Positions 2,827-60,590 of a stretch of 64,000 nt of DNA are shown here, piece by piece. Location of the stretch: the NCBI GenBank assembly GCA_001938485.1, contig MQRK01221314.1, positions 20,675-84,674 on the forward strand, in the 5' to 3' direction. How positions within the stretch are numbered: position 1 is the stretch's first letter; every line of letters begins with the position of its first letter. The translations under genes were made by a program, and so were the position numbers. The notes beneath the pieces are model-generated. The model made no database searches. It had not been told where the DNA came from and saw nothing but the letters and a program-made list of their open reading frames with translations. Source of the DNA: Girardia tigrina. Its lineage: Eukaryota.

Positions 2827-3523
2827 ATGATCTCATCGGTTCTCTTCCTCGGCGTCGTCGTCGCGCTCGGATCAGCGACCCGGGAACGATACGGCCTCGA
2901 GTTCCGCAAGCCTGGCGCCTTCATTGACGCTGTCTATTCGACTTTATGTGAAGAATCGGCTGTGAAACTTGAATTGTTCGTCAATCGAACGGTTGGCGTT
3001 GTGATGTTTGCAGAGAATCGGGCTCGAAACGCAACCGTTCTTGTGTATTTGAAACAGCCGGGTGTTTATATGAATATCACATACGGGTTGAAAAAATACG
3101 AAGTGTCATATACGTTAGACTTCTTTGACAATGAATGGAATGGGTGGCACGAGATTGAGATAAGGGTTGGCGAGACGAGATTCGGGTTTGTGTTTGATGG
3201 AGTCACAAGGGAGGGTGTAATGGAAGAGGGGCTACTCTTCCCTGAGAGATATATCGAGGAAAATAAGATTGTGTTCGGGTTGAACTTGAAAGAGAAAAGG
3301 GGAGCAATACCGGGCTTCCAAGGGTTTATGAGGAACTTTCAATACAAAAGTTGTGGTTGTGTTCACTGGCGACCGATAAAGTTCGTGAAGAATGAAGGAA
3401 TTTCTTTTGACAGACTCGGAGAATGCGGATCCCCCTTGGCTTGTCCTGTAAAATGTTCATGTTTATTGTTTAATTCGGGTGGAAAGAGGTGCGATTGCTC
3501 CGGGCTCCAATGTCCGGCGGCGG
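2827..3523 (+). CDS. Exon 1: signal peptide, LamG domain, EGF-like module
   Basis: [17 protein letters not shown] signal peptide; LamG motifs NGWHEIEIR and GFQGFMRNF; Cys cluster CGSPLAC...CDCSGLQC; donor G|GTCAGT (phase 1). Confidence 0.9.
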
Positions 3524-6500: not shown

Positions 6501-7739
6501 TATAAGTTTACCTACTTTGTTAATGAGAATAGTTACCTAAACCCCGGTTGGAACATTATACTGAGTCAAAGAGGTTTCTGGACTTAAGGTGGCAATAAGT
6601 AACCAACATGGAATGAATATCTTTAAGTTCCTGAAATGTTTGTAAAAAATTTACAAAAATATTAAAAAAAACATTTTTGATTTAGATAATGAAGTCTTCT
6701 ACAAATTCGACAACGAAGATCTCGGTTCTTATAAAAAGCAGTTAACGGTTGTCAGTAAATCCGAGAGGTTGACCTACGGGCTCGGAATATTTGGTCAGTC
6801 TCTGAAGATGGACGAGGACCACTTCTTGGTACTATCTGCGGAACGAAGCAAATCATGCTTTAAGAATACTTTCTTTTGCGAAAGCGGTAGGAGATTTTTA
6901 TTTAATTTGTCATATGAAATGAAATAAAAAAATAAGCTTGAATTAGAGAAGGGATCCACACTTGAGGTCTCGCCTTCTGTTGTATAATTATTTCCGGCAA
7001 TTGTTGTGAACGTTTATGTCAGGAAATATTCAATCAATATTATAAATTATTAATTAAACCATTACTTTCCATGGTCCTTTGATTATTATTCTAGAAAACA
7101 AATTCATAAATATTATTTATGGTCTCCCTTTACCCATCTCTCAGTATATTTGTTCAAGCGAATTTGGAATCTGCATTGTACGCCGGGAATATGTAGGGAA
7201 AATACTTTTCGAATTTCATGTTACAAAAACTCTTGCTCTGGTTGTCAAAAAGGATTCAGATATATTTGATTTATAGCTTGAAAACAATAAATGGTTTTCG
7301 ATCTATTTTCCGATTTTTGCAATCAATTTACCAATACATATTACATTTTAAAATTTAAAAAATATGGAGGGAAAAAAGTTATAAAAATTATAATAATTAA
7401 AAATAATAACAAAGTAAATATTTTCCAAAAATAATTACACTCAATCCAAAACGTCCATGATCTTCCCACTCAATTCCTTTAGGTTAAGAAGGCAGTTGTC
7501 ATCAACCCTGTCTCTAACTTGTTGTTTTTGATTGTCATCAAGTTTGGTGTCGAAACTGTTCCGCCAGTGTCTCAAAAATCTTAATATTTTTGAACTGTCC
7601 AGTAATTCAGATCCAGCTATCAGCAATGACTTTGGTTGAGTGCTTTGCCGAATTTTACTAGCAATTTTGTCTTGGTCTTCCTGTGAAATTTTAATGTTCT
7701 ATCTCCAAATGTTCATGCTCATTCTCTTTTTTAAATACG

Positions 7740-7783
<44 letters not shown>

Positions 7784-10700
7784 TATTTATTGGAAAATAT
7801 ATCGATAAACCCTATAAATAATCCTAGATGAAGAAACTTAAACCTTATTCAGCTACATGTATGTAAAAGTAATGTCGTTCTTTTATGCTTCATTTTCGGT
7901 CGAATCTTGCAGGAATTGCACATAAATATAAAGTGAACGGCATTTTGTGCCCTATATAATCAGAAGGATTTGGAGGATAGAATACCAATGAAGCATAGCC
8001 ATAAATAATGAATTAATCGTTCATTTTCTATGTGTTTATCATTGTATTCTTTAACCCTACTCTGAAAGACCCTTTGTACATATAGGATAAAAATTATTAA
8101 TAATATACTAAAAGCACAAGAGCTAATTGTTTGAGAGCAGAAGATCGAATTCCGCTAGTTTATCATTTCTTTCCTGTTAGAAAAGGACGGTAAAAATTGA
8201 TGTCTTTACATTTGGGAGAATCTAACTTTAAATGTAGCAAAACAGCGCCCCCATAGACATACTTTATACTTAGGAATACCAACAAGTTAAGAATTTTATA
8301 ATACAAATAGTGTTGTTTTACTATTATTTCATTATTTGTATTATTCAGACATATATTATCAGTTCTGGATGAAGTCATACCCCTTGAATGGAAAGGATGC
8401 AGAGGCCGAGCTTCTGAAGCACGGAATGTCGAGGGACTCCACTTTCGGATTGGGGATCGCTCGCGTTCAGAACGTCTTTCAGTTTATTTATACAACTAAC
8501 GACAATAAGCAATACAAGATTGATGCCGTTATACCTTTACTAAAGTGGATCAGAATTACCCTTTCTTTTAACCAAACGTTTTTCCAGTTGTTTATCGATT
8601 CCAAATTATATAAAATCACGGGCAAATATAACGAACTGGTAGACGTAATTCCATCCATCATCAACACAAAGTTTTTATTTATTGGAAAAAGAGGAAGTAA
8701 AGGGAAAATTGAGATTGATAATTTTTATTTTTCCACCAACGAATCTGTAGTAAAGAGTCCTACAGTTGACGAATTACATATAGAGCAATATAAGAATGGG
8801 AGAAGGTCAAATGAAGATTGTGAACCACAGTTGAAAGGTCAAATGGTAAACATTAACAACTGCTACCTCAATGTATTTCAATCCTCAAATTTTTCTCTTG
8901 GATTTTTTGTGTCATTGATTTTTTCTACGGAACATTTGCAAGGATCTGTCATCCTCTTTGATTCTTCTTTTTTTAGGATATATTTGATGTCAAATGAACG
9001 AATTGAATTAAGATTGTATAACGATATGAGTTACTCAATAATATTGAGGAAGACCATCAACAATTTATGTCACTTGGAGATATCTGTAACCCCGGAAAAC
9101 ACGTTATTCGTATATCAAGACGTCGACTTTGAACTTACTAGTTTCCCTTTCCGAGTCAGTCTCTTTGAAGAGGTTGGACATAACATATATGTATTAATGA
9201 ATGGAGATAGCGACACTTTGAAGGAACTGAAACTGTTGAATGTGAATAAAGACATCGGAATTCGAGCGCTCAGAATACCAACAAGTAAAATATATTTTAT
9301 TTTATAATTCTTAGATTACTTTTTTATTCATTCCCCTTTACTGCAAACGCTCCTATTCATTAACTTAGGAGTTCATGAAATACTAAAGGGTAAAAGAGAA
9401 GAATGAATGTGTACTCTTCTTTTTATTATTGCTTGCCATTTATCTTATTATTAGTTTTTATTTTTATAACAGGTCGGATAACTTCTAACTCAGAAGACTT
9501 TGATAACTTTGACGCAAGTTCGTATGGATTAATTGAGCGCTCGGATGGCTACCTCGGTCGAGGGATTCAACTGAAATATCCGGTCACAAAGATCTCTCAC
9601 AACATCTTTCAAACATCTTGCATAAGAAATATAAAATTGTGTTACAACGGAATTACTCTTTCATTTTGGATGAAGTTAAACTCTCGTCCTAGTATTCCTC
9701 GAAATCGCTTCTTTTCCATCTTTTCTTCTGGAAAGACGGGAGTCAATTTATTGCTGAATTCAGAAAATGACTTTATTGTGGTGATTGAAAATCAGAAAAC
9801 CAAGAGATTTCCTGTTGCTGAATTTGATGCAATGATAAATAAGTGGTGCCTCATTGAATTATCCTTATCGAGTAATGGGATGGTCTTCCTATTCAAAGAA
9901 GGCATTGAACTGCAAGCTTTTGAAGAACTCTACAACGCAAAGATTGATGAGGAATGCGCAAAGATATGTTTCGGAGAGGACAACACGGATTTTGACAAAA
10001 TATCCATTTATATTGATGAGATTCTCCTTTTGGATGTTGGGAGATTATTTCTCTATGCCAACGGATTCTTGTCTAAAAGTAATTATAGTTTTAATTTATT
10101 CTGCAAATTTTTGTTTTCCTTTAACTTAGAAGATTTTTATTTCCCTTCTTCAGCACAACATAATAATGTAAAGGATGAATTTTCAATTCTGACTTCAAAT
10201 TTCGATATGCATTCGGATAGATAGTTTTGTGAGTCATTATTGATAAAACATCACACTAGCAAAGCTGTCATGTGTCATATATTTTTATTTAACATTGTGA
10301 TAAGTAAATTATATTTACATTTCAATATTTAACTATATTTTTTTTCTTATTATATTGTATTAAAATTATTGATATTTAATTTTTACAAACCTTTTTTAAA
10401 TGTTTATTTATTGATTACATTAGTAATAAATCTTAAATTTCATCAATTATTTATAAAATTATATTTCATTTTTAAATATTTTTATATTTACTAGAAATTA
10501 AATTTAAAATTATGTTTTACTTTATCATAAAAGTAACATCTTTGTATAAAAATGTTATTTAAATTTGATAATATGTATTAATTTTATATAACTAAAAATT
10601 TTATTTAATAGTTAAAATGTTTTAAATTTAAAAAAGTTATTTTTTTAAAAATATATATTTAAAATATTAGTATTTCAAAATAAATATTTTTTAGTATTTG

Positions 10701-10898
10701 AAGTTATTTCTATTCAATCGGAATTTAACAAATATTCTGTGTTTGATCCAGACTACTTTGTGGTTTTATTTTGTAATATCACTTATCTGTTCTATTAATG
10801 AGCGACCTATCTGATGATGTTCTGATAAGAACGAAACATGTCGTGATTTTTGCAATAATAATTCAAAGATGTTTCTTCGTTTTTTACTATGCTAAATC

Positions 10899-10934
<36 letters not shown>

Positions 10935-11535
10935 AGGTGCAAAAGTTTGTGAACGCTTCTTTCTATAGTGCTTTTTGTTATTGCACTGCATGTTTGTGTA
11001 TTCCTTGTTAAATATACATAAAGCATTTAAATGATTAAATGCATATTTTATTTTTATTACTTTTCAAGTTATAAATTGTCCTTATTTATTTTAGAATCAT
11101 GCCTGTCCGCGACAAGAAGCTAACATCAGTACAGTGTGCAGCAGTTTTTGCATTGCAGAAGCACGGCGTTTCTTATCGACAAGTAGCTACAACTCTTAAT
11201 GTTTCTCTTGGATTTGTGTGTCAGACTGTTCAGAGAGAAAGGGAAACTGGTTTCTTATGTTCAAGATCTCGATCTGGTCGTCCAAGGTCAACCAGTCAAA
11301 GAGACGACAGAAAGGTTTTACAGGATGCTAAAAGAACCCATCATGTTACAGCAGTGCAACTTTGCAGTAGGCTGTCCCAGAACTTGCAAATCATCAGAAA
11401 ATGGTTAATCCGTCGCAGATTAGCTGATGGTCTCAGGTCCTTAAGCCAGCCAAAAAAACATTGCTATCTGCAAAAATTTAACAATTTAACAATTTGACAA
11501 TTTAACAACAAGTGTTCACAAATTTTTGCACCTGA

Positions 11536-11583
<48 letters not shown>

Positions 11584-14500
11584 NNNNNNNNNNNNNNNNN
11601 NNNNNNNNNNNNNNNNNNNNNNNNNNNNNNNNNTATATATATATACATATATATATGTATATATATATATATATATATATTCTATAATTTTAGAATCCAG
11701 TCAGCATCAGCTCTTCAGTTTCACTAATAACCAGTTTGGAAAAGAAATAACCCTTGAAGGATCTGCAAAACTTATAACCACAAAATATGGCCAAGGGGTT
11801 TCTCTCAATGGGTTTGGTATTAGATTTGCAAAAGTAAACATGAAAAATGTTCCCAAATGTTTCTCTTCAATATCTGACTGTCGTCGGGGAATACTTATGC
11901 GACTTGTCATAAGAATTGATAGTCTGGCCATAAACCATCAAGTATTTGTATCGAGTCCTCAAATTAGTATTGGAAGTAATGAACGACGTTTATTCGTTCG
12001 TTTAGTTTCCTCAAATAAATCTTGGTTCTTTATCAGCAAGGATATTTTACAAGTGTTTCTGTGGCAAATAATTGTGATATCTTGGAGACTTGATAATGGT
12101 TTGAAGGTATTTTTTAACGGTCAATTTATTGGTCACGTAAGAAATGGAAATGATTTCGAGCATACCAATCCTTTTTGGGATTCTCATCTTTATTTTGGCA
12201 GAGACTACGTTCTAAATTCTAGTGGCTATGCAACTGCCGTAATAGATGACATGGAGTTCTTTGATGCAGACAAGACTCATTTGGGGTTGGAAAAGTTTCA
12301 TTTTGAAAGTACATCTTTGGATATTTCGTTTTCTAAATTTATTTTTTATTTCAGATGTATCCTGTCTCATTCGATACACGTTCGATGAGAATAAAGATTC
12401 GCAAAGTAAAGTACAGTTGGGTGTCATAGGAAATGCGGGAAGGTTCAATGATCAACTCACTACAAACAGGACCATGAATGTTCCAAAGTGTTTTGATGAA
12501 CATTTTACTGGATGTAAAAGATGTTTAACATTGAGATTCTGGATTTATCTTAACAAAATCAATGTCACAATTTTACACGCCAGACACGTAAAACTTTCGA
12601 TTGAAAGAAGTGGTTTTCTTATAGATATTATAAATGGTCCTGAAATGTCCTCCGAAACGTATTTATGTGGATACGATTATCAAGAATTAATAAAAAACTG
12701 GAATTTGTTTGAGTTATCATTGGATATAGACGAAGGTCTCTTAATATTTGTGAACCGCGAATTATTATTCTGTAATCTGGTCAAAACCGACAATGCGCTT
12801 TCAATAGTAACAAAAGGAATAGAAATCTCCACCAGTTTTGATGGTTTCCTTGATGAAATGGAAATGTTTCTGAGTAGACTATCAATCTTGTATTGGAATA
12901 AGATTGTTGACGAAGGGAAAATAGAAAATTTGTTACAGAGATTAAAGGAAAACAAGAAACTTCTAAAAGAAATGACTAATTTGGCGTCTATTAGTCGAAC
13001 TGGGAAGATTAACATCACTGTAAAACATATAGAGTCATTTGAATTCAATGGAAGCAATTATTTGGAGTATAAAATGCCAGCCAATCTTGACTCTGGTATT
13101 ATGGGGAGCAAAGAAGAGATCGAGATCACCTTTAAAAGTCATGATATAATTGCCAGTGGCATTATATGGATATCCGATGGACAAAAATCTAAAGGCATTT
13201 TGTCTTTGAAGGTAATTTTAAATCTTTGGATTTGTTTCATTTACTTCTTAAATATAAAATTGTATCCCATTAAAAGTATTGAAAGCAATCATAAAGTTGG
13301 GCTTAAATTTTTACTTCCAACAATATTGGAATTACATCAACGATTTTTATATCCTCCATTATTTGTTATGGAGCATTTTAATCTTCATGGTCGAGAGTAT
13401 CACGGTGAGTAAATTATGTTACCATTATTACTTTTGGAAACCCGAAGTCCCTAAATGAAATACAGATCCATATTTTATAGAATAGACCATTCAAACTGAA
13501 TTGACCGTTTTACTGTTTAGTCCTCGAAATCGTATCATTTTAGAGTTATGAAAGCATTGTTATACGCTGTGATGTCAAAAGTACATAGACCATCAGATTA
13601 ATTAAAAATGTATGAGCCTGGATTTTAATACAAAAAAGTACATCTACGTAAGTAAAAATTATGGCATTTGTCTTAACCTTTGACTATTTCATCAGGCATA
13701 TTTCGCGATAATTCAATTTCACTTGATATGAGACATTGTAAGGAGTAGTGTAATAATGTTTTTGCTTATAACGAAATAATTCAGCAACTATGTGAGGTTT
13801 AAAATTCGCTGAAGAGACCATCCCTCAATAAAAAACTTACAAGTTAATTAAATAACTATTTAAATTATTATATAAGTGTGGCGTAATGAATGTGCACAAC
13901 GAGGAAAGGAGTTGGAAACCCCGAGAAATCGAACATGTTTGTGAAGAGAACATCAATATTTAGGCTTAAATTGGTACTCCATTTTTGGATGAGATGATGT
14001 CTGAGATCTTTTTTTCATCGTCAAAGGGTAGATTAAATTGATAACTTTGCTTAAATGAAATCTCGACCACTTTATTTTTGACTTCCTCAACAAGAATATG
14101 GTAGAACAATTGAAATCAATCGCATATTTCATTTGTAGCATTTGACGAAATCGATCATTTTGAAAATCAAATTAATCCCTTTTTATGATCAATAAAATGC
14201 ATCAATGACGAACTCCAAATAAAAGTCAGATTCGCCAGTATCTCTATCGTCTCGTTAATTTTTGATTCGGTAATCCATCATTAATATGTCCTTCATCAGA
14301 ATAGATCAATCAACCCAATTCACTTTTCCGTGTAAAATCGAATCGCAATTGTTGACAATACATTTTTATATAGTTTAGTTGATCACAATATTTAGTTGAA
14401 AATTCACATTATTTTTGTTTAAAAATCAAAACAAAAACCAATCTTCAGAAATGCTTTATTTTCATACTCATCCAAATTGAAATTATCGACTCTCCTTTTT

Positions 14501-20500: not shown

Positions 20501-20600
20501 TAACCTGCTGAATCACTGTCGTGTCAGGAATAGTGGATTGAAATTATCCCACTTGAACGAGGAATTCCTAGTAAGCGCAAGTCACTAGCTTGCGCTGATA

Positions 20601-20631
<31 letters not shown>

Positions 20632-40216: not shown

Positions 40217-40247
<31 letters not shown>

Positions 40248-46200: not shown

Positions 46201-47394
46201 TAGAATTAGTCTCAAGAACTGTTTCCAATAAAAAAGAGAAGGAAAACATTCAAATAAATCGAAATCTTTTGAGAACTGCGTTTAATTTAGATAGTTTAAT
46301 GTAATATGAATCAGCCTCGTCCAAATATCGTTTTTGAAATTCGAATTTGTTCCGAGACAAAAATATTATTCTTAGATGTCGGCCGTAATATTTTCACTTA
46401 CGTTGGACGAAATGTTGACAAAAATTATTAATTTTGATTAAAGATCAAATTATGTGAACAAGACCTAAAGAACGAGATGAGTGTTGAAGAAATCAAACTG
46501 GCTTGGTTAAGGTCCATAACTTACGGATGGCACCAGACTCGGTGTGAGAACAGTTTATGTTTCTAGTGATTTCTTTCTGAACAATGACCTTCAATGAACG
46601 CTCTGTTGACCGCGACTGGCCATGTCTGACGATGCACAACTTATTTCATGGTATGACCTAAATAATGATTGACCAACCTATTTCTACGCCTACGATGTCA
46701 TAAATAGACATATGAATGAGTAATGAGTATTTAGGTTTTGTTTTATTGAATCACTTGATGAACTCAAGTCAAAAACGATCCAGTTGTTGTTGATGATTTT
46801 GTATTTTTATTTGATTATTTTATTTCTTTGATTTGTGTTAATGCAAACATGCAAATAGCTCAAGCTAAAGTAGTTTAAAATATGTTGAAAACAAAACTTA
46901 TTCATATCCAAATATTTTTTAAAACAATGTTTCGATGAATCTACTTCGTCGTTACTGAACTAATTTATAAATTGTTCTTATTCTCTTTTCAATCATGTTC
47001 TTGAATTTGTTTACAGAGATGACAGAGGAGAGTCTCTCCAATGAGTCTGTAACTTCACATTTATTTCTTTTATATTGATACACGTTAAAGAAGGTTTAAT
47101 AGTATTTATTAAAGAACATAATTGAAAATAAATAATAATTAACTATCATTAAAAATTATAATTATTTTAGACAACTATAACCCAAAAATTATTTTGGGCG
47201 CCAATTTTGAGTTCAAAAATACTTTTGAAGGATTGATTGCAGGTAAATAATTTTATTATTATTAGTGTTGTGATCTACCTAATCTACAACATGTTTGTAT
47301 TTATATTAAAATTAAATATACTTTAGTTATAATTTTTCTTATTTTTATTCTGTCTCTATTTATTCTAGATTATCCTGTTCACTTATCGAAGTAC

Positions 47395-47464
<70 letters not shown>

Positions 47465-50400: not shown

Positions 50401-53400
50401 CACCACAGCGTTTATCAGATTTGATGAAGTAGCAAAGCTTCTCTTTTCCTCAAGAAAGTATACCTTTAGCGGTGATTATATTATGTGAGCAAATTGCTGA
50501 AGACATTAACAAAACTAAAATCAATAAAATAATAACGATTAAAAATATACAAATTAATTAATTACTTACCGAGTATTTTGAGCTTGTTAGACATTGTTCT
50601 CTCTAATAAAAGTTTCTATCAAATGCACGGGTTACCTTTATCATTTTATTTATTAATTTTCTTTTGTTATTTACTTTGGTTGTAATTACGTTAAGAAAAC
50701 GTTATAATTTTTATTTATTTGTTAGTAAAATTTGTTATTCCACCATTTTCGGAATAATAACTTTTACAATAAGAAACAATTGAACAAAAAGACGTAGAAA
50801 ATACGAAAAGACTTTTGGTTCACCCTAATATCATAAATCATTCATACATCAAACTACTAAAGTTTAGTCATAGATGTCAAAGATATATATTCTTGTCAAG
50901 GGTTTTTTCTTTAATGGAAATTGTCTCTTTGATTTCGACTCATACTTTTAGTTAGCTTTCCTTCATAAAAACACAGAATGAAGAATGTTTGTTAAAATAT
51001 GAATTTGTACTTAGTATTGTTCTAGAAAATTAGTTTTTGAAAAATCTGACATGGAGGAAGACAAATGTCAAATACCTAAAACCGAACATTGAAAGGATAA
51101 TAGAAGTAAATCGGTAAACTACAGAGATTATAAATGCCGTCGGGGAAAATACTTTTAGGAGATGAATTAATTACAGTTGTACGTAAATCCCTTGAAGAAC
51201 TTTGAATACGGATATATTACAAGAGACCAGAGATAATAACTTTTAAATCTTGTGAAGATCTTATTTGTCACTGGCAGTTCTTCTACCTTTTTCTTCTATA
51301 TCTTTTGTCACCTCTCAAATTATCTGATCTTTTTTGTTGCTAATTGTTTAAACTTTGTAAAATTTAGGTTAAACTTTTTAAATGAAATTCGAAAAAGAAT
51401 TCCTAAAAGATTTAAATTATCATTATAAGAATGGCAAAAATATTTATTTTGTAAAATACTGAAACAGGCTTCCGTTGGAATGGTCGAGACCTGTTAAATC
51501 TGGACAACAAAGTCTTGAAAAGAGGACAGTCCTTATTCAACATTTCCATGCCTATGAGAATATTCCCGCATCAGTCTCCTCATTTAGTGATTCCAGGTTT
51601 GATGCATTATTGTACTGTTTGGATCAACTAATGTAAATGATTAGCTTTTCAGAATGTTGCCATCATCATTTTACTTTTTGTCTTATTTATTTCATTATGT
51701 CTCCAAATATTATTCTTTGCCATTCGAAGCCGCAGATGGACAATTCCAGATCCTATAATATGTAATTTATAATATCTTTTGCCCAATCAATTGATACCTA
51801 CCTTTAGATGTCAAGGAGAAGCAGTGTCTCATGGTTGTTATCTTTTTTTATTTTATTAGAATTTTATTTTTTAACGATAATATACTTTTGAACGATAATA
51901 AAAGATCTTTTTTATAGGAATTTTAAAATTTCCCATAACTGTTTGCTTAAAATGCAAACTAATTATCTAACCCTTCCATAGTTATGATGACATAGTTACA
52001 GCTAAAGAGTATTCGTTTCTAAAACATTTGGTGTGTGTTCAATTTTTCAGTAAATACAAAGCGAATGATCAATGTTAGTGTCGAATGCAGTTGGCACACC
52101 TTCTGAATTAGTAGAATCAGACATTTTGCTAAAATCTATTTTATCACACCCTTTTTGAAACTCAGTTAAAAAACACATATTTAAACAAAATTATTTTTAT
52201 GTTGAGGAACTTTCTTTTTTATAAAATTAAAACCGGAATAAATTATAATTATTTAAAAAATAAATATTCACATTTATTTAAAAATTTTCCTTTCCTTAAA
52301 CATTTCTTTTTTCAAATACTTTCACCTTCAAATTGCCAATTAAGTTTTTAAAGTCTTATCTTTTTTTAATCATTCCTTATTTATTTTATTTACACTTTAC
52401 ACTTTCAATGATTTATTTGTTTACTTTCCACATTTTTCAAAACTTTTCTACCTGGTTACTGATCTCTTAAACGTTACCATTATTTAGCAACGTTTACATA
52501 AAAATTTAAAATTAATTAAAACATTATACAACAATTTTTAGCAAGTACTTTGGGATAAATCATCAATTATGGTCATCATTTCCACAGAAATATTCATTTT
52601 TGACCCTAGTCATTGAATTCAGGGGTCAGGAAGGAAAAAGGAAGGCACTAACACCAACAACCAATCAGCGAAGGAACCTTTCCGGAAAATATATATTGAC
52701 TTCTTATTGATTATTCAAAAGAAATATAAATGAATATATTTGCAATAATTGACCAGATTAGTAGATAAATTAGTCTGAATGCAGCAGCTAGTCAAGATAA
52801 AAAACAGATAGAAAATTGCTATTGGATAGATGGATATGGAAATTCAGACAACCAAAAGAAATACATGTAGATAGAGGTAAAACATTTAAATCGGCTATGT
52901 CCAAAGACACGGTGAAAAAGTTCAAAGTTGAGGTATTCTATTCAAGTCCATATCATCATAACACAAATGGAATCGTGGAAAGACAATTGCTACGATCAGA
53001 GATACGTTGAATATTAGAATGAAGGATGGAGATCATAAAAATTGGACAGAAGTCGAGTTTATGTTAAATAGCTACGACAGGCATGTCACCATCCGAGGTA
53101 GTATTTGGAAGAAAACTGAGACATTGGTGGTAAACAATCACGAAGATAACAAAAATTTGATAGATGTTCAACAAGAAATAGAGACAAGAAGAATTTTGAA
53201 GTTGGAGACAAAGTATTGATAAAAAAGGAAAATGTCTCAAAAGAAGATGACCGTTACATAGGTCCCGCAACAGTGATGAGAAGAAATCATGAAAGAAGCT
53301 ACGTGCAAAGAGATGCAGGAATATAATTTTCAATGACTTTAATTATTGTTTAAATAATAAATAATTATATTATAAATAGAATTTTATGATTTATTCTTAT

Positions 53401-56400
53401 ACAAGTAACTGTACAATTATTGTGAGTTTTCATGCTTTATTTTATCGAGATCTGAACTTGCAAAATGAAACAATACTAATATAACAGCTTCCATTTTTTA
53501 AAACATAATAGTGGTCTTCTTTTTAAAACGGCGATCTTTCTTGAAAAGATATGTAATGCTCTTGAAAAACATTTAAAACAATAAGAACATTTATAACAAG
53601 ATGTGATGATCGGTTTTATTTGTTATATTTTAATATTTGAAGAATAAAGATATCGACTTTGAAGAGATGGATGGGGACATAAATCTAAAACTGGACAACA
53701 TTCAGGCAGAATGGATAACGACAACTTTTATTTCTCCAGTTAATCAAATGAAAGAGTTAGATTCAATTTAAATTAAATAAAAGTATACTTAATTATGAAA
53801 CAGGTTCCACAGCGTTATTTTAACAAGGGATACACCTCTAGTTGCAAATCTTGTGGTATTCGATATGCTAGTAATACCACGGACGGATGAAGTTGCTTTG
53901 GTCATCTATGGGGACTCTCCCATCCAAGTAAATCTTTGATGAATTCTTACTTCTAATTTTTTTGTGACAGTTCATTAGACCAAATCATGCAGATATATAT
54001 ATAGAAAATATGATTTGATTTATGCTTCTTTTAAATAATTATTGAACATGTTTCAATGTTACATACGTCATCATCAGCAATATTTGGAGATTAAGCGTTT
54101 GAATATTTGAATATTTGTTTTGATAAAATAATATAATTTTAAAACTTTTATTAATTTTTAAATGGTAAATATTTTTATTAACATTATTATTTTTTGAAAT
54201 ATTATTGGGTAATAATGGCAAAAAAATTTAATTAAAAATTTTAAGTATTGAAATGACTTTACTTTACCCATTCTGAATGTTAATTGATGGGTTGTAGTGT
54301 CTTATTAGTAGAGATTCACAAAACTGTCGTTCGTAATGTGAATCGAATCCCATTTGTAGAACAGAAAACTCATCTTTTGAAATGGATGAGGTTCTATCCT
54401 TACAACATAACCAATGATCAAGAACCTTACTCGATCGACTCATTTGCGAGTACTCCGTAATCCGGGTTTTGAGATGACGATTTATCTCTCTAATGTGATC
54501 TTGATCCTCCATTCGTATAAAGGTATTAAGTCAGAGGCTTTTTACGCGGTTCTGAGACCCTTATGGCTTCAAAAGGCGCTTCCTCCATGGGGGGATTTAT
54601 ATGCCTAAGTTTAAACGGTGAACCGGCTTTACAACACCCCTCACCAAGATTAGAAAACTTGTTTCATTGCGATGCAATCGACTGCAGGGTCACTACTCTC
54701 TACAGCCANNNNNNNNNNNNNNNNNNNNNNNNNNNNNNNNNNNNNNNNNNNNNNNNNNTATATATATATATATATATTATATTTATTATAATAAAAAGGT
54801 AAATAACTTTTATTGTACCTAATTAATTAAAACAAAATATTTAATTTTTTAATGTTTATTTTTTATATATCTAACATTTCGATGTTACATACGTCATCAT
54901 CAGCAATATTTGGAGATTTAGCGTTTGAATATTTGTTTTGATAAAATAATATAATTTTAAAACTTTTATTAATTTTTAAATGGTAAATATTTTTATTAAC
55001 ATTATTATTTTTTGAAATATTATTTGATAATAATGACAAAAAAATTTAATTAAAAATTTTAAGTATTGAAATAACCTTACTTTGCCCATTCTGAATGTTA
55101 ATTGATGGGTTGTAGTGTCTTATTAGTAGAGATTCACAAAACTGTCGTTCGTAATGTGAATCGAATCCCATTTGTAGAACAGAAAACTCATCTTTTGAAA
55201 TGGATGAGGTTCTATCCTTACAACATAACTAATGTTCAAAAACCTTACTCGATCGACTCATTTGCGAGTACTCCGTAATCCGGGTTTTGAGATGACTATT
55301 TATCTCTCTAATGGGATCCTGATCCTTCATTCGTATAAAGGTATTAAGTCAGAGGCTTTTTACACGGTTCTGAGACCCTTATGGCTTCAAAAGGCACTTC
55401 CTCCATGGGGGATTTATATGCCTAAGTTTAAACGGTGAACCGGCTTTACAACACCCCTCACCAAGATTAGAAAACTTGTTTCATTGCGATGCAATCGACT
55501 GCAGGGTCACTACTCTCTACAGCCATGAGACTCAGTTTTGCGACTGGGCCTTTAGGAAATTGGTTTGCTAGTCCAATAACGATATATCGGCTGCCGACCG
55601 TTCAAACAGCAAATGGCCCAGCTCAGGACGCTTTCGCCTAGAGAAGAGAACTCTAGTTTCCCAGGGATACCACGTGGAGGTACGTCCTAACTGGTCTAGC
55701 ACTCAGTGATCCATGCTCTCTAAAGTACGAGTTTTGACACTCGTGACAACTAAATTTATGTACCAAATTAACAGTGAAATCCACAAACTGTTTTCGATTT
55801 ATTTGAGAGGATACTTTGAACTTTGAATGTGACAGAGACTACTTTGGCACTACTTATCGTTATAGAAATACTCTTCTTAAAAGCTCTTAATCCTTCAGAA
55901 TATGGTATTTTAATGATTTTTTTGTAATATTCAATATTTTTTCTTTTAATTGTTTCTTAATCCGTGTACGTAATTTGTCTAATTTTACCCTAATGTTGTA
56001 TTTTATTTGTTTATTTGTATACATATTGTCCCTAAAGCGTCATCTAAGAATATTTAAACCCTAATTTTCAATTTCAAAATTGGACGTCAAATTCCAAACT
56101 CTGAACAAGGCCTTTTACTATATCATCTCTATTTTTTCCTCACAAAAACTCTGTGGTGTTGTGTAAATACATGTATCGGTTGCTTTTCTGAGTAATTCAG
56201 TTTTATAGCCTCCATTCTTTCTTGGGACAAGAATTTCCTGAAAGGGAATGTCGACCTCCAATTCTGTGGTAAATTTAATATTCGGATGAAGACCATTCAT
56301 GAATGTTAGGAATGGTTCTATGAGGGATTGATTTCTGAAAACCAAAAAGAAATCATCCACATATCTCTTGTATAACTTAGGTTTTCAACATGGTATATAT

Positions 56401-59400
56401 CAATTTTATCCTCATGTGACTTCATAAAGATTGATGCCAAATTTGGAGCTAAGGGGGAACCTATTGCGACACCGTCTTTTTGAATGTAAAATTCATCATT
56501 AAAAAGAAACGGTACATTTTTGGTAAAAAAATTAAGAAGTTCTTTCAGTGCTTGCTTGTTTATTATTTTATTCAGAGTTAGAGTTGTCATCCCATAATCG
56601 TTTACACAAATCGATGCTTTCATCGATGGGTAAATTCGTGAATAAACTGGAAACGTCAAATGAGACCATCTACATTGACTTCAGTCTTTATGAATTCACT
56701 TGAGGAAAGAATTTTATTTAAGGGCAAATGAAAATGTCGAAAACTTCCCTGGTTAATTTTTGACATTAACACAGGAGTTATTTGAAATTGTAGACATAAA
56801 ATCGTATAAAGCAATCTTTCTCAAACGTATTTCACCCATCGCCCTCTTTATGAGCACCATTTTTCTTAATGTCACCACCCATAATATTTATCAGGTTCTT
56901 TCGCCAAAAGTGGCCTTTTTAACCTGAGTGACTTTTAAACTACACTTGAGCCATATCTAAAATAATTATGCTTAATATTTCATTTGTTCTTACCTTTCCG
57001 GGATTGAAACCCAATTATATGTTCGTAAAAGATAGAACAAGAGAAATACAAATATAAGAATTTATTTTGCAACGACAGCTAATAATAACAATGAAAACTC
57101 AAATAGATTGGTGGCCATCCATGGGGCGATATAGCCTACTTAGAGAAACACTGGTATAAAGTAATAACAAGTAATACAAAATAAATTACCTTCTGAGTAG
57201 ATATTGTACTTTTAACTTATGATATTGGTAATTTATTCATCGTTACAAAAATAACTTTAACTGCTGAAAAATTCAAATATGTTAACTTAGACTGCTGAAA
57301 TGTTATATCCTGTGAATACCAAGGACCAGGAGTATACTTGCGTGAGCATTCACGCATCTGCTGATTACAGATACGCATACTGCCACATGAGACATAACTA
57401 TTTTAATGAGCACAATTTGGTTGAATTACAGGTACTGTTCACATTCGTAGATATTCATTCTTTATACATAGTCTTAGGTATGGGAGGTAAAAGACACTTG
57501 GAATCTTATATGCCGACCGCCAAATGTAAAATTCGATTTTTCAGTTTCTGTGCCTGGGTCTTCATCTCATTGTTTATTAGTCAATTGTTATTTATCTTCC
57601 ATTTTTATGTGGAATCTTGAGTCCTCTTCCATTATCCAGAAGATTACACTAGATTCCATACGCACTCTTGACTTAAACTCAATCACAGTATCTCAAAACT
57701 CGGAATTAATATTAATTAATGATGCAAATCTATTTCAAGTAATATCCCCTGAGACCGACTCAAGTCCCTTAGAAATCAAATTGTACAATTTTCCGGTTCC
57801 AGATGAATGCCAACAGGTTCTATCGGTACAACAATCAAATTTCCTCATATGTATTTCTTATTCTTTTATTCTATTATATTATTTTGTTTATTTCATTCTG
57901 AAAATATTAAATGTGTTTTTTGATTTATTATTAAGAATATTATGGATTTCAAGCAAGTGTTTATTCTATTCAAATCTTTTGAGGAAAAACTTTGAATTTC
58001 TACCCCATACAAGTGGTTGGATTAATCTCGGGTCAGAGACTCTAATTTTCCTGTATCTTTATCAAATAACTTTACTCTGTGGTTATGTTATCAATACGTC
58101 GTCATTGACAGATTGATCGTTCTTTCCTGATTCAATTGGTGGTGGTATATGGTCCTTCTTAATTCCGTTAACGAACACATCAATCTGCTGCTAAATAGAA
58201 CATTTGGTTTTAATGGCAAATTCTGACTTCTTAGAAGAATAAATAGCGTTTAGTAAAATGAAATGCAACATAAATAGGACTATGATGTGCTTAGATGTCC
58301 TACAAAAACAGAACAAGCGAGTTTTATTTCTGGTTAAACGGCCAGTAACTTGTTGAATCACTGTCGTGTCAGGAATAGTAGATTGAAATTATACCACATG
58401 AACAAAGAAGTTCTAGTAAAGGCAATTCATTAGCTAGCTTTCATTGCGTCAATGTCACTGTACAATCAATGGTTTCTTGTATCAGCGAGATCTTTGGATA
58501 CTGATCTAGAAGTGATAAATTTTCTATAATAAGGAAATGGCAATCAAATTTTATTATTTAGATAAATTAAAAGTTGTAACAATTAAAAAACTCGCTATAA
58601 AATTTGTAGTGACTGATATTCGGATGCTAATTTTAGAATACAGATATCCTACCGCATGAGATCTTATCACATGAGTAATCTTTCTCAATAAAGTATTTAA
58701 GGGGTCATCCTTAGTCCCGCGTTACATTTAATGTTTCTTTCAATTATTAAAAAGAAGCTTAAAAACGTTTTTGTGTTTGTATCAACTATTTGGCTAGTGG
58801 ACACAATTAAAAATTAATTAAAATTAATGATAACTTGTTCTAATAATCAGGGTTTTAAAAAATCAAAAAGACAGAAATTCGAATTATTAGGAAGTATGAG
58901 TTCCTATTTAGAACCATATCATCAGAAACCATGTAAAATATCAAAAGTGTGTTCGGAGACAATGCTACTATGCAGCAGATAGCCTCAATTTGTTCAGAAA
59001 ATTCTGGAAAGACAATTTTAACCTCAAAAATGAGTCTCAGGGTCGGTCAGGAACGCAGGTAGACAATGACGAGCTGAAGGTAACTGAAGAGCAAGATCCA
59101 CCACAAAGTGTTTATGATATTTCGTTAAAGTTAGTTGTTTCAAAACAAAAAATATTGAGTCACTTGGCTGAAATTATAAAAGTGAAAAAGTTGGATAAGG
59201 GGAATTCACATGAGTGGAGTGAAAAAGCAGAAACAAAAAAGTTGGCATTCTTGCTTGATGATACTTTCTCTTTATAAATGTGAACATGTTTTTAATCTGA
59301 TTGTCACTTATGATTAAAAAGGAATATAATATGATAATTTTTAAAGTTCAGTAAGCTGGATGGACATGAATTAAGAACCAAAATATCACTAGAAGCTGAT

Positions 59401-60590
59401 TGTATGTATTTTGTAGTTTGCTGCAGATGTAATTCATTGAGACTTCACAAAACCTGGTTCGTCGATCATAGCAGATGTCTACTACAACAAAATCGAAAAT
59501 ATGATGTGGAAACTCAAAGAAAATAACCGAGGTTGGTAAACAGGTCTACTCTCATCTTGCTCTGCAACAATTCAAAGCAAGATATTGCACTCAAGACGTG
59601 ATAAAGCTACAGGAATTCATACTCATCAGACCTATCTTCAACTTACTATCATGTTTTCCTCAATTTAAACCACTTTTGTAAGCAAAAAAATCAATTTCGA
59701 AGATGCTGTAAAAATGGCCATCCAGGCATTTATAGATTCTCATCCAAACAAATTTTATTCGAATGGCCTCAATAAGCTGTCGCTCAAATCGCAAAAAATA
59801 TGTTGCTAATATAAATGCATACTTTGATGAATGACATAAATATTTGTAATAATAAATTATCAATAAACTTTGATTTTAGTTCTACGAATTTCATATTTGA
59901 CAACCTAATATATATATATATATNNNNNNNNNNNNNNNNNNNNNNNNNNNNNNNNNNNNNNNNNNNNNNNNNNATATATATATATATATATATATATCAT
60001 AACAGTCTTTTAATTATTCATTAATTATATAAAAGGTTGATTAATATGATAAATATTTTATAAAGTAACCGAATCTCAAGACGTATACCTCTTTGATGCC
60101 AGGAATCAAAGTCTCACAAGAAGAGCGAGTGAATGGAAAATAGTATTGGTCAGTAAGGTTGATCTGAAAAACAGAACCCAGCTGGCTTTGGGAACAAATA
60201 CCGGAGAGATTTATTTCACTAATGACATCAGCAGAAATCAACATTCTATTCTCGGTCCGAAAAACAAGAGCCCGGTTTCTTATTTGTCAGTAAATTAATC
60301 TCATTAAAAGATAATTATTTCAGATCATCTGTGTTCAATTTTCTTCTGACGGCAGTTTCCTGTGCGCAGGGTATGAGAACAATATGATACATGTTTGGAG
60401 AATCAGGCCTGGCATTTCCATCTGCCATTTCCATGCGATCCACGAATCCGGGATTCTCAATGGACTGCATTTCAATGGCGATGCTACATTTATCATCGCC
60501 TCCTTCGTAATTTTCGGATCGTCACAAAATTCCCAAAACAAAATCGTTTTAAAATTAATTGACAGACAAAAAAATCAAAGATTGGCATAA
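2827..60590 (+). CDS. Multi-exon neurexin/CASPR-like LamG-EGF single-pass receptor with probable cytoplasmic WD40 region (whole-gene span, 31 exons, about 2990 aa; about 2665 aa if it ends at 54018)
   Basis: Manual splicing with all junctions GT-AG and phase-compatible: 2827-3523, 6686-6886, 8349-9284, 9315-9389, 9473-10078, 11694-12308, 12355-13211, 22515-22655, 22706-22870, 25353-25651, 30117-30285, 33370-33557, 33588-33910, 38369-38574, 38620-38722, 38771-39577, 40881-41498, 41540-41706, 43730-43892, 43947-43979, 47171-47242, 51468-51596, 51645-51761, 51808-51833, 53643-53755, 53804-53927, 57079-57153, 57324-57431, 57478-57850, 60066-60274, 60324-60590. Domains run continuously across junctions. 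The link beyond 53927 is less certain. Confidence 0.75.
6686..6886 (+). CDS. Exon 2: start of first LamG-like/pentraxin-type repeat
   Basis: TTTAG acceptor; open frame DNEVFYKFD...GIFGQSLKM...[11 protein letters not shown]; donor GTAGG; joins exon 3 (DIYYQFWMK). Not in the ORF track. Confidence 0.85.
7000..7700 (-). mobile_element. Degenerate IS630/Tc1-like transposase remnant
   Basis: [29 protein letters not shown] resembles the HTH of IS630-Tc1 transposases; remainder disrupted. Confidence 0.4.
8349..10078 (+). CDS. Exons 3-5: LamG-like jellyroll repeats A-C
   Basis: ORFs 8336-9307 and 9403-10224; introns 9285-9314 (30 nt) and 9390-9472; motif [20 protein letters not shown]...KWCLIEL...YIDEILL. 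Confidence 0.88.
10805..10847 (+). ncRNA. Minimal hammerhead ribozyme motif (Penelope-type)
   Basis: CTGATGA-T-GTTCT(GATA)AGAAC-GAAACATGTC; palindromic stem III ACATGT; GUC triplet; stem I weak. Confidence 0.6.
10930..11538 (+). mobile_element. Internally deleted Tc1-like element in a (TA)n tract
   Basis: TIRs (C)AGTCAGGTGCAAAAGTTTGTGAAC / GTTCACAAATTTTTGCACCTGACTG; ORF 11099-11497 has paired-like HTH and RSGRPR motif but no DDE domain. Confidence 0.9.
11694..13211 (+). CDS. Exons 6-7: LamG-like repeats D-E and start of a neurexin-type LamG
   Basis: ORFs 11840-12388 and 12246-13412 joined by a 46-nt intron (12309-12354); [42 protein letters not shown]. Confidence 0.88.
13270..13900 (-). mobile_element. 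Degenerate Tc1-like DDE remnant
   Basis: Fragments resembling VLFSDE and IWxCISxxGxG on the - strand with many stops and frameshifts. Confidence 0.35.
16335..16884 (+). pseudogene. 28S (LSU) rRNA gene fragment
   Basis: Conserved LSU blocks ACGGACCAAGG, GACCCGAAAGATGGTGAACTATGC, GCGAAAGACTAATCGAACCATCTAGTAGCTGGTTCC, GGGCCATTTTTGGTAAGCAGAACTGGCG; about 550 bp, intronic. Confidence 0.95.
17094..18352 (-). mobile_element. Full-length mariner element with frameshifted transposase (mellifera-subfamily-like)
   Basis: About 30-bp TIRs, TA on both flanks, 1259 bp; motifs CVPHQL (WVPHEL), [23 protein letters not shown] over three ORFs. Confidence 0.95.
20182..20631 (+). pseudogene. 18S (SSU) rRNA gene fragment, 3' half
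   Basis: GGTGGTGCATGGCCGTTCTTAGTTGGTGGAGCGATTTGTC, GCAATAACAGGTCTG, GCACGCGCGCTAC, CTTTGTACACACCGCCCGTC. Confidence 0.96.
20900..21705 (+). mobile_element. hATm-like transposase remnant
   Basis: [45 protein letters not shown] match the HWDGKL / FDTTASNTG / LACRHHxxEL pattern; several stops. Confidence 0.7.
21706..22410. repeat. Non-autonomous repeat with (CTGT/TTGT)n microsatellite and internal ~60-bp duplication, possibly Helitron/HINE-like
   Basis: TCTGTTTGTCTGTTTGTCTG near the start; unit TTTTATACAGG..GCTTCCGATGACAATACAAT at about 21812 and 21972; spans an N gap. Confidence 0.4.
22515..22870 (+). CDS. Exons 8-9: LamG domain
   Basis: [10 protein letters not shown]...HQKSGK, 50-nt intron 22656-22705, then NVYFGGY...SFVGVIYK; donors GTAAGC and GTGAGA. 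Confidence 0.85.
23005..24799 (-). mobile_element. TIR DNA transposon (Tc1/mariner superfamily-like), decayed, with nested solo LTR
   Basis: Inverted termini GGG..CCAAAAA(T)GCGGCGCTTTT with TA on both flanks; weak DDE-like remnants on the - strand. Confidence 0.6.
23625..24351 (+). mobile_element. Solo LTR (TGTGAGGAATAT family)
   Basis: TG...CA ends; perfect 5-bp TSD ACCAC (23620-23624 / 24352-24356). Confidence 0.85.
25353..25651 (+). CDS. Exon 10: LamG linker and start of next LamG
   Basis: [19 protein letters not shown] motif; phase 0 in, phase 2 out. Confidence 0.85.
26040..26168. repeat. Short inverted repeat derived from a Penelope-like element 3' end
   Basis: About 40-bp arms; encodes [13 protein letters not shown], similar to the GIY-YIG tail at 28690. 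Confidence 0.55.
27150..27390 (+). mobile_element. Gypsy integrase C-terminus, polypurine tract and LTR start
   Basis: PYEGPFEVI...ISVDRLKP (GPY/F module); PPT GAGGGGGAG at 27371-27379; TGTAG at 27383. Confidence 0.8.
27982..28025 (-). ncRNA. Minimal hammerhead ribozyme
   Basis: Reverse strand CTGATGA-T-GACGG(TTAAA)CCGTC-GAAATTAATA. Confidence 0.7.
28810..28854 (+). ncRNA. Minimal type I hammerhead ribozyme
   Basis: Stem I TTTGTT/AACAAA; core CTGATGA; stem II GACGG/CCGTC; GAAA; palindromic stem III ATTAAT. Confidence 0.85.
29300..29530 (-). pseudogene. Fragment of a mitochondrial seryl-tRNA synthetase-like (SARS2/SLIMP-type) gene
   Basis: [46 protein letters not shown] matches the class II SerRS motif-1 region; rest of the gene not found in the window. 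Confidence 0.75.
30117..30285 (+). CDS. Exon 11: LamG middle strands
   Basis: TTTCAG acceptor; [17 protein letters not shown]; phase 2 in, phase 0 out. Confidence 0.85.
31880..32770 (+). pseudogene. Ulp1/SENP (C48) cysteine protease domain remnant, probably transposon-derived
   Basis: One frame across 31978-32670 with an internal TGA: [19 protein letters not shown]...WIDPLG, then PLQDNPADC; possible decayed Zn finger upstream. Confidence 0.7.
32930..33245 (-). repeat. Partial copy of the TGTGAGGAATAT solo-LTR family
   Basis: Reverse complement of 37470-37760 (GATTGTGTCTCTCCTAATCAGATGGATGAT). Confidence 0.7.
33370..33910 (+). CDS. Exons 12-13: LamG end and EGF-like module
   Basis: [13 protein letters not shown]; intron 33558-33587 (alternative in-frame acceptor 33602); [11 protein letters not shown]...YKCNC...KPCSE. 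Confidence 0.85.
36054..38093 (+). mobile_element. Decayed mariner element with two nested insertions
   Basis: TIRs TTAGGTTGTCAAGTGTGAAATTTGTAG / CTACAAGTTTCATACTTGCGACCTAA; TA flanks; [21 protein letters not shown] motifs; inserts at about 36830-37130 and 37451-37918. Confidence 0.88.
37451..37918 (+). mobile_element. Solo LTR (TGTGAGGAATAT family) nested in mariner
   Basis: TG...CA ends; TSD TTATA (37446-37450 / 37919-37923); mariner sequence resumes on both sides. Confidence 0.85.
38369..39577 (+). CDS. Exons 14-16: two LamG domains
   Basis: Introns 38575-38619 and 38723-38770; [11 protein letters not shown]; [12 protein letters not shown]; IGCLQTF; FGKC. Confidence 0.88.
40881..41706 (+). 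CDS. Exons 17-18: five tandem EGF repeats and start of last LamG
   Basis: Repeated CxNxGxC...CxCxxTxFxGxxC; 41-nt intron 41499-41539. Confidence 0.92.
41894..43102 (+). mobile_element. Decayed mariner-like element
   Basis: Imperfect TIRs with TA flanks, about 1.2 kb; LHDYAPV (HDNAPxH) and [13 protein letters not shown] motifs. Confidence 0.75.
43730..43979 (+). CDS. Exons 19-20: last LamG middle plus 33-nt microexon
   Basis: NQKQLWLHY...KILLY; 54-nt intron with CTAAC branch point and TTCAG; microexon 43947-43979 ([11 protein letters not shown]), donor GTACGT. Confidence 0.75.
45661..46781 (+). mobile_element. MULE-like remnant
   Basis: GGATC...GATCC termini; subterminal ACAAAAC repeats; weak similarity to a MULE transposase C-terminus at 46300-46700; follows a TGTGAGGAATAT start at 45642. 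Confidence 0.35.
47171..47242 (+). CDS. Exon 21: last LamG C-terminal strands
   Basis: [24 protein letters not shown]; TTTTAG acceptor and CAG|GTAAAT donor. Confidence 0.85.
47398..47464. repeat. Compound (TA)n(GT)n microsatellite
   Basis: Direct reading; other (TA)n tracts at 7741-7779, 10902-10930, 11539-11680, 40217-40243, 59909-59997. Confidence 0.95.
49893..50768. mobile_element. LTR-like TG..CA element carrying a host gene fragment
   Basis: Ends TGTGAAA / TTTTACA; perfect TSD ATAAG (49888-49892 / 50769-50773); contains a 71-nt N gap. Confidence 0.7.
50105..50420 (+). pseudogene. FERM N-terminal domain fragment (FARP/CDEP or band 4.1-like)
   Basis: [51 protein letters not shown]; the conserved VKF(Y/F)xPDP segment is missing. 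Confidence 0.85.
51468..51833 (+). CDS. Exons 22-24: LamG end, transmembrane helix, juxtamembrane segment
   Basis: [12 protein letters not shown]; [25 protein letters not shown] followed by basic RSRR; introns 51597-51644 and 51762-51807. Confidence 0.82.
52620..53320 (+). mobile_element. Gypsy integrase remnant
   Basis: [39 protein letters not shown] (DDE core), GPA-like tail; frameshifted. Confidence 0.85.
53643..53927 (+). CDS. Exons 25-26: cytoplasmic region, first propeller-like strands
   Basis: [24 protein letters not shown]...; 48-nt intron 53756-53803; [10 protein letters not shown]...[12 protein letters not shown]; phases 0/2/0 compatible. Confidence 0.72.
53971..54018 (+). CDS. 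Candidate alternative terminal exon ([15 protein letters not shown])
   Basis: 43-nt intron-like segment 53928-53970 with T-tract and GACAG; in frame; ends in TGA. Confidence 0.35.
   Translation, partial: FIRPNHADIYIENMI
54040..54082 (-). ncRNA. Minimal hammerhead ribozyme (second, less complete copy at 54870-54908)
   Basis: Reverse strand TATTG-CTGATGA-T-GACGT..ACATT-GAAACATGTT-CAATA; stem I TATTG/CAATA; stem II has a mismatch. Confidence 0.7.
55312..55715. mobile_element. About 400-bp non-coding insertion splitting the GIY-YIG motif
   Basis: TSD CTCTCTAA (55304-55311 / 55716-55723); removing it restores SY(I)REINxHLKTR. Confidence 0.8.
57079..57850 (+). CDS. Exons 27-29: WD40-like repeats
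   Basis: 57079-57153 (less certain); 57324-57431 ([14 protein letters not shown]...VELQ); 46-nt intron; VWEV...[16 protein letters not shown]...[10 protein letters not shown]. Confidence 0.7.
58104..58582 (+). pseudogene. Strongly decayed 18S rRNA fragment
   Basis: Colinear with 20215-20631 (ATTGACAGATTGAT, GACTTCTTAGA.GAATAAATAGCGTTTAG, GAATCACTGTCGTGTCAGGAATAGT) and extends to AAAGTTGTAACAA; AT-shifted, with deletions. Confidence 0.85.
58730..59908 (+). mobile_element. Decayed mariner, same family as 36054-38093, left TIR lost
   Basis: Colinear homology to 36130-38093; right TIR CTACGAATTTCATATTTGACAACCTAA followed by TA. Confidence 0.85.
60066..60590 (+). CDS. Exons 30-31: C-terminal WD40 repeats and stop
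   Basis: [13 protein letters not shown]; [29 protein letters not shown] is a canonical WD40 blade; TAA at 60588-60590; AATAAA about 40 nt downstream. Confidence 0.85.

What the first reader, a model, noticed from the sequence alone, without database searches (positions are those of the whole stretch)
2827..60590. Neurexin-like adhesion receptor apparently fused to an intracellular WD40 beta-propeller
Seen: 26 phase-compatible exons give SP-LamG/EGF ectodomain-TM plus about 100 cytoplasmic residues ending at a phase-0 donor (53927). Five further exons starting in phase 0 (57079-60590) encode clear WD40 blades with no obvious CpG-rich first exon of their own. The last pre-junction residues ([20 protein letters not shown]) already look like a propeller blade. 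Known: neurexins, CASPR/NrxIV and Crumbs have short tails with FERM/PDZ motifs and no folded cytoplasmic domain. Inference: a receptor coupling LamG adhesion directly to a built-in WD40 scaffold would be a distinct signalling architecture. Uncharacterised relatives may exist in other spiralians; I could not check this.
Basis: partly seen in the sequence, partly recalled or inferred. Interest (0 to 1): 0.9.

Follow-up and report, generated by a model that had tools for sequence, protein, structure and literature searches.

The report
Third planarian PHRED-family adhesion receptor
This flatworm gene really does encode a neurexin-like surface protein with a built-in WD40 scaffold inside the cell, but that design was described in 2017 (PHRED-1), and this is an unstudied sister copy.

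Summary
The fusion is real; the architecture is known. A 29-exon, stop-free model gives about 2,950 aa: signal peptide, LamG/EGF ectodomain, one TM, about 430-aa tail. All six gaps lie in introns. SP-LamG/EGF-TM-WD40 defines the lophotrochozoan PHRED family (bioRxiv 10.1101/131789; Dev Biol 2017). The window gene is not phred-1 itself: this genome holds a separate phred-1 orthologue and a dd_4586 orthologue. It is the orthologue of Schmidtea mediterranea dd_13045 (2,958 aa, one TM, C-terminal propeller, weakly epidermal; listed in a supplement of PMC6453901; I found no functional study). The flagged junction is an intron inside the first WD blade, shared in position and phase by two paralogues. 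Likely role: an adhesion receptor whose propeller scaffolds cortical partners (inferred). What is new is modest: a three-member triclad family, with this member having a longer LamG array and a degenerate propeller.

The parts
2827..3523 (+). Exon 1: ATG, signal-peptide-like stretch, LamG domain, Cys-rich module
   Evidence: PF02210 E 7.2e-5; N-terminal hydropathy 1.72; 55 of 100 residues identical, ungapped, to S. mediterranea dd_13045 (counted by eye)
6686..13211 (+). Exons 2-6 (6686-6886, 8349-9284, 9473-10078, 11694-12308, 12355-13211): about five LamG_3/ConA-like modules, then the start of the LamG that matches PHRED-1 residue 250 onward
22515..39577 (+). Exons 7-15 (22515-22655, 22706-22870, 25353-25651, 30117-30285, 33370-33557, 33603-33910, 38369-38574, 38620-38722, 38771-39577): LamG, LamG, EGF-like, LamG, LamG
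40881..41498 (+). Exon 16: block of five EGF repeats (aa 2100-2305)
   Evidence: PF00008 E 1.5e-8; 32 Cys, 5 EGF patterns; dd_13045 EGFs start at aa 2101
41540..51596 (+). Exons 17-21 (41540-41706, 43730-43892, 43947-43979 uncertain, 47171-47242, 51468-51596): last LamG and stalk
   Evidence: Intron positions mirror paralogue L030 by eye; exon 21 on RNA contigs
51645..51761 (+). Exon 22: single transmembrane helix followed by a basic stop-transfer stretch
   Evidence: Kyte-Doolittle 19-residue maximum 3.12; no other exon exceeds 1.72; spliced on both sides in four runs; dd_13045 TM 2513-2532
51808..53927 (+). Exons 23-25 (51808-51833, 53643-53755, 53804-53927): juxtamembrane linker and first strands of WD blade 1
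   Evidence: Joints; exon 25 aligns with the first WD blade of paralogues L030 and L036 at 17% and 10% identity
53928..57290 (+). The flagged junction: a 3,363-nt phase-0 GT..AG intron swollen by retroelement pieces, a 690-nt duplicate and an assembly gap
   Evidence: Joint in X1 and X9 at 57291, in X10 and X6 with three variant letters at the joint; same-phase intron of 51 nt in L030 and 43 nt in L036; duplicate 665/689 identical
57291..60590 (+). Exons 26-29 (57291-57431, 57478-57850, 60066-60274 or -60289, 60324-60590 with stop): rest of the WD40-type beta-propeller
   Evidence: PF00400 above cut-off in exon 29; many WD40 structures in the PDB search; propeller clusters 0.90-0.93 in ESM Atlas, weak recognition; 990-1,005 nt predicted against 986, 1,010 and 1,059 nt of contig beyond 53927

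Best explanation
One gene (2827-60590, about 29 exons, about 2,950 aa) encodes a type-I membrane protein of the PHRED family: signal peptide, roughly eleven LamG-type domains and six EGF-like repeats, one TM helix, a short linker and a WD40-type beta-propeller in the cytoplasm. It is the orthologue of Schmidtea mediterranea dd_13045 and a paralogue of phred-1 and dd_4586. Shown: one spliced in-frame transcript from the last LamG through the TM into the propeller; orthology; a shared intron inside blade 1. Inferred (about 55%): it is an adhesion receptor whose long LamG/EGF rod binds matrix or a neighbouring cell, probably at epidermal or epidermis-muscle contacts, while the tethered propeller binds cortical or cytoskeletal partners in place of the FERM/PDZ adaptors that neurexins, CASPR and Crumbs recruit.
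For: Spliced joints in four studies and one 8,401-nt contig across TM and WD parts. Stop-free model of 2,954 aa with EGF block at 2100 and TM near 2500 against dd_13045: 2,958 aa, EGF from 2101, TM 2513-2532, propeller 2702-2937. Family definition and phenotype. Separate phred-1 orthologue at C222618 and dd_4586 orthologue at C251639. Compact paralogue C59343 runs EGF-LamG-EGF-LamG-TM-WD40 within 7 kb with the same phase-0 intron. Exon 27 is single-copy in the genome.
Against: The runs are contigs whose RNA status is a guess, and a contig is not one molecule. Only 51455-57454 was laid. The tail is just 10-20% identical to the paralogues' blades and exon 27 does not align with its counterpart. 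No usable structure (pLDDT 36.5). No kin found in the protein collections. No functional data on dd_13045; its epidermal assignment is weak (0.527). Comparisons with published Schmidtea sequences are by eye and cover at most the first 400 residues.
Confidence: 0.92

Rival explanations
1. Two neighbouring genes (a short-tailed neurexin-like gene and a WD40 gene), joined by mis-assembly or rare read-through.
For: An assembly gap and a duplicated block lie in the junction intron; contigs can be chimeric.
Against: GT..AG joint in four studies at depths like those of flanking joints; the intron splits a WD blade and is shared by two paralogues; the Schmidtea orthologue is one 2,958-aa ORF.
Confidence: 0.02
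2. The gene makes both a propeller-bearing form and a short-tailed form by alternative 3' ends.
For: Some intron-retaining contigs at low depth near 51808-52393 and 53345-53665; contigs drop rare variants.
Against: No joint or end supporting a short terminal exon is listed; the retained pieces have 3 to 20 times lower depth and may be pre-mRNA or DNA.
Confidence: 0.12
3. The receptor signals by cleavage: the ectodomain is shed and the propeller is released from the membrane, as with Notch or neurexin intracellular fragments, rather than acting as a tethered scaffold.
For: General knowledge of single-pass EGF/LamG proteins; a folded tail could act once freed.
Against: PHRED-1 runs as one band above 270 kD with an ectodomain antibody and sits on muscle fibres; nothing here points to a cleavage site or nuclear signal.
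Confidence: 0.12
4. It is a true neurexin (or CASPR/Crumbs) orthologue that gained a WD40 tail in this lineage.
For: LamG-EGF-LamG modules and a TM.
Against: Schmidtea has separate genes assigned to the neurexin family (dd_13697, dd_23270), and dd_13045 is not so assigned; no short tail, no PDZ-type end; the WD intron is shared across the three-member family.
Confidence: 0.04

Closest known systems
S. mediterranea dd_Smed_v4_13045 / SMESG000063654 (unnamed; Supplementary file 3 of PMC6453901)
   Same: Orthologue: about 55% identical over 100 N-terminal residues (by eye), near-equal length (2,958 against 2,949-2,954), same domain positions, one TM, C-terminal propeller.
   Different: Different dugesiid species; no function published that I could find.
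PHRED-1 (dd_Smed_v6_4789; Adler and Sanchez Alvarado 2017, bioRxiv 10.1101/131789)
   Same: Signal peptide, LamG/EGF ectodomain, TM, intracellular WD40; homologous LamG modules in the same order; shared intron positions with the family members in this genome.
   Different: Paralogue, not orthologue. About 450 aa longer, with an added N-terminal LamG/Cys module and about five LamG_3 modules against one; one LamG between EGF block and TM against LamG-EGF-LamG; short linker; far more degenerate propeller (E 4.6e-6 for dd_13045 against 1e-37); weakly epidermal rather than muscle.
S. mediterranea dd_4586 (SMESG000056635)
   Same: LamG/EGF-TM-WD40, epidermal cluster 24.
   Different: 1,994 aa, lacks the N-terminal LamG array; its orthologue here lies on C251639/C254372.
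Alpha-neurexin, CASPR/Neurexin IV, Crumbs
   Same: LamG and EGF ectodomain, single TM, adhesion role (own knowledge).
   Different: They have short tails with FERM- and PDZ-binding motifs; this protein has a tail of about 430 aa with a propeller and no PDZ-type end.

Membership tests
PHRED family | Signal peptide plus multiple LamG and EGF domains outside | tested here: met
PHRED family | TM followed by WD40 repeats in the same polypeptide | tested here: met
   Spliced in-frame joints and one contig across them; PF00400 above cut-off; one ORF in the Schmidtea orthologue
PHRED family | Sequence homology to PHRED-1 ectodomain | tested here: met
   Six exons hit the phred-1 orthologue contig C222618 at E 3e-5 to 0.015 in a small local database
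PHRED family | C-terminal WD40 region strongly conserved among members | tested here: inconclusive
   Shared intron position and phase and colinear motifs, but only 10-20% identity; exon 27 does not align. Homologous, not strongly conserved.
PHRED family | Lophotrochozoan host | tested here: met
   Orthologues of three S. mediterranea genes in the same assembly
PHRED family | Muscle expression and myofibre RNAi phenotype (PHRED-1 itself) | not testable with these tools
   Orthologue dd_13045 is assigned weakly to an epidermal cluster; no knockdown found
phred-1 orthologue | Closest match to dd_4789 in this genome | tested here: not met
   C222618 matches the published PHRED-1 stretch far better, about 60% by eye; the window gene matches that locus at 29%
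Neurexin / CASPR / Crumbs | Short cytoplasmic tail with FERM-binding and C-terminal PDZ-binding motifs | tested here: not met
   Tail of about 430 aa; last residues give no class I or II PDZ ligand
Neurexin / CASPR / Crumbs | Phylogenetic grouping of LamG domains with the family | not tested
   No outgroup proteins were reachable by reference
WD40 seven-bladed propeller | Closed ring of seven four-stranded blades | tested here: inconclusive
   One blade above Pfam cut-off; length of about 370 aa fits; single-exon fold unusable; the joined tail was not folded

The most novel reading that the evidence does not exclude
Triclads tripled the PHRED gene and split the copies between muscle (phred-1) and epidermis (dd_4586, this gene), so that they form heterophilic muscle-epidermis or epidermis-basal-lamina junctions; this copy gained a LamG_3 array that lengthens its reach and a remodelled propeller with new partners.
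Probability: 0.2. Interest if true: 0.45.

Novelty: new member of a known kind. Interest (0 to 1): 0.2.

Why it matters
The architecture itself is not news. The useful result is that PHRED-1 has two undescribed paralogues in planarians that share intron positions, so redundancy may mask phenotypes, and the role of the WD40 tail, left open by the 2017 paper, can be approached by comparing a conserved with a degenerate propeller. It also settles a gene model across six assembly gaps.

Tried and rejected
Representative search with exon 27 gave four repeat-rich non-relatives. Homologue search with exon 6 was blank, and with a paralogue WD exon gave one near-identical fragment; both are limited by length, so the range outside planarians rests on the 2017 paper. 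AlphaFold on exon 27 alone was unusable, so no fold search was run. Weak own-genome WD hits were not paralogues; the best was RACK1-like. Earlier findings: none. Literature searches for dd_13045, dd_4586 and the SMESG ids found nothing in main texts; the journal version PMC5497596 is not held. Rejected as exons: 57079 (not in joints, early stop), 58912-59274 (looks like a mariner transposase piece; no room in contig lengths), a hydrophobic ORF at 50610-50780 (intronic), and the FERM ORF at 50129. Left out by rule: any search or fold of the joined protein, and typing of published Schmidtea sequences, which have no reference here and were compared by eye.

Full report
Setting. The window is contig C221314 of a 1.43-Gb assembly in 255,254 contigs, about 30% GC, with six N gaps. 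Orthologues of three Schmidtea mediterranea genes make it a dugesiid planarian (inference; from memory the size fits a Girardia assembly, not checked).

Observation. Long plus-strand ORFs give LamG at 2827 (PF02210, E 7.2e-5), LamG_3-like modules at 8291 and 9394, EGF repeats at 40859 (E 1.5e-8) and a WD40 repeat at 60315 (E 2.7e-6, above cut-off). A model built from coordinates has 29 exons, all with AG/GT ends, compatible phases and no internal stop: 2,954 aa, or 2,949 with the more likely last donor at 60274 (49-nt rather than 34-nt intron). One exon has a TM-grade hydropathy peak (51645-51761, 3.12; all others at most 1.72). All gaps are intronic. No gap was filled.

The junction. Four runs from four studies were laid on 51455-57454. 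All show the joints around the TM exon, the 26-nt micro-exon, 53755>53804, and 53927 to the exon at 57291 (GT..AG, 3,363 nt; in X10 and X6 the first codon differs by a synonymous letter and the joint is listed at 57294 with three letters between). The 57079 candidate is skipped. Contig 19 of X9 (8,401 nt) carries exons 21, 22, 24 and 25 and 1,059 further letters on the 3' side; contigs of X10 and X6 have 1,010 and 986; the model predicts 990-1,005 coding letters. On the 5' side X9 has 6,830 and X6 7,492 letters, against 7,351 in the model. These lengths agree with a single mRNA, but only the central 6 kb was laid. The runs are contigs and their RNA status is a guess; exon 27 is single-copy in the genome, which argues against a processed copy.

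Independent genomic support. Contig C59343 (L030) holds a compact paralogue: EGF, LamG, EGF, LamG, TM, linker, WD40. Its first WD blade is split by a 51-nt phase-0 intron, followed by a 147-nt phase 0-0 exon; the window has 141 nt with the same first and last residues. Contig C167605 (L036/L037) has the same intron, 43 nt. Exon 25 aligns with those blades. So the flagged place is an old intron inside a blade, enlarged here by retroelement pieces, and not a border between genes. Identity is low (10-20%), and exon 27 does not align; the last two exons align weakly and in order.

What is known. Adler and Sanchez Alvarado described PHRED-1: 2,536 aa, signal sequence, 6 LamG, 9 EGF, TM, intracellular WD40, homologues only in lophotrochozoans (Schistosoma, Lottia, Octopus, Capitella), muscle expression, thickened myofibres after RNAi, one band above 270 kD (bioRxiv 10.1101/131789; Dev Biol 2017 per the reference list). 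The matrisome tables of PMC6453901 list two more such proteins: dd_4586 (1,994 aa) and dd_13045 (2,958 aa; LamG from 18, EGF from 2101, TM 2513-2532, propeller 2702-2937; epidermal cluster 24, weak). Exon 1 of the window gene matches dd_13045 at 55 of 100 residues without gaps (by eye), and exons 2-3 continue the match. C222618 matches the published PHRED-1 stretch closely and C251639 matches dd_4586. The window gene is therefore the dd_13045 orthologue and a third family member. By architecture C59343 is probably the 3' half of phred-1 and C167605 the tail of dd_4586; I did not link these contigs. The second TM predicted for PHRED-1 corresponds in L030 to a Gly/Val-rich stretch just before the true helix; the window gene has a single helix followed by basic residues, a clean type-I layout.

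How it likely works. Shown: one transcript and reading frame, topology signals, family membership. From the family: cell-surface protein needed for tissue architecture. Inferred: the ectodomain is a long adhesive rod, and the propeller is a tethered docking surface replacing FERM/PDZ adaptors (about 55%); release of the tail by cleavage (about 12%) and a minor short isoform (about 12%) are not excluded. The donor WD40 family is not identified: hits are generic.

Limits. Protein collections returned no kin, so the range beyond planarians is taken from the paper.

Verdict. New member of a known kind; interest 0.2.

Noticed in passing
window 50129-50485 +: ORF piece with a FERM N-terminal domain (PF09379, E 2.5e-8) inside intron 20, beside gap 50031-50101; looks like a decayed or processed copy of a FERM gene, not part of the receptor.
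   Followed up: partly
window 16351-16949 and 20120-20620 +: Fragments of eukaryotic LSU and SSU rRNA in intron 6 (Rfam); a further decayed SSU-like piece near 58230-58480 by eye only.
   Followed up: partly
window 54005-54708 and 54834-55525: 690-nt tandem duplicate, 665/689 identical, on either side of gap 54709-58; probably two haplotypes of one retroelement end joined by the assembler. Very high contig depth.
   Followed up: partly
window 17121-18254 -, 48752-49592 -, 42393-42761 +, 36239-36822 +, 58912-59800 +: Many mariner/Tc1-type transposase fragments in introns (by eye).
   Followed up: no
window 29260-29553 -: Antisense ORF piece that resembles part of a seryl-tRNA synthetase (from memory), possibly a decayed processed copy.
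   Followed up: no
window 31819-32900 +: ORFs resembling a Ulp1-type protease region, as carried by some DNA transposons (from memory).
   Followed up: no
L002 (G000:C125879): Identical copy of the last two exons on a 1.8-kb contig; likely a haplotig.
   Followed up: partly
L030 6042-6434: The paralogue's TM is followed by a Cys cluster, a likely palmitoylation site; the window gene lacks it.
   Followed up: no
L013 (G000:C232086:48578-51937): Intronless ORF of at least 1,287 aa with repeated LamG_3 modules, weakly like exons 4-5 of the window gene; a possible relative of the added N-terminal array.
   Followed up: no
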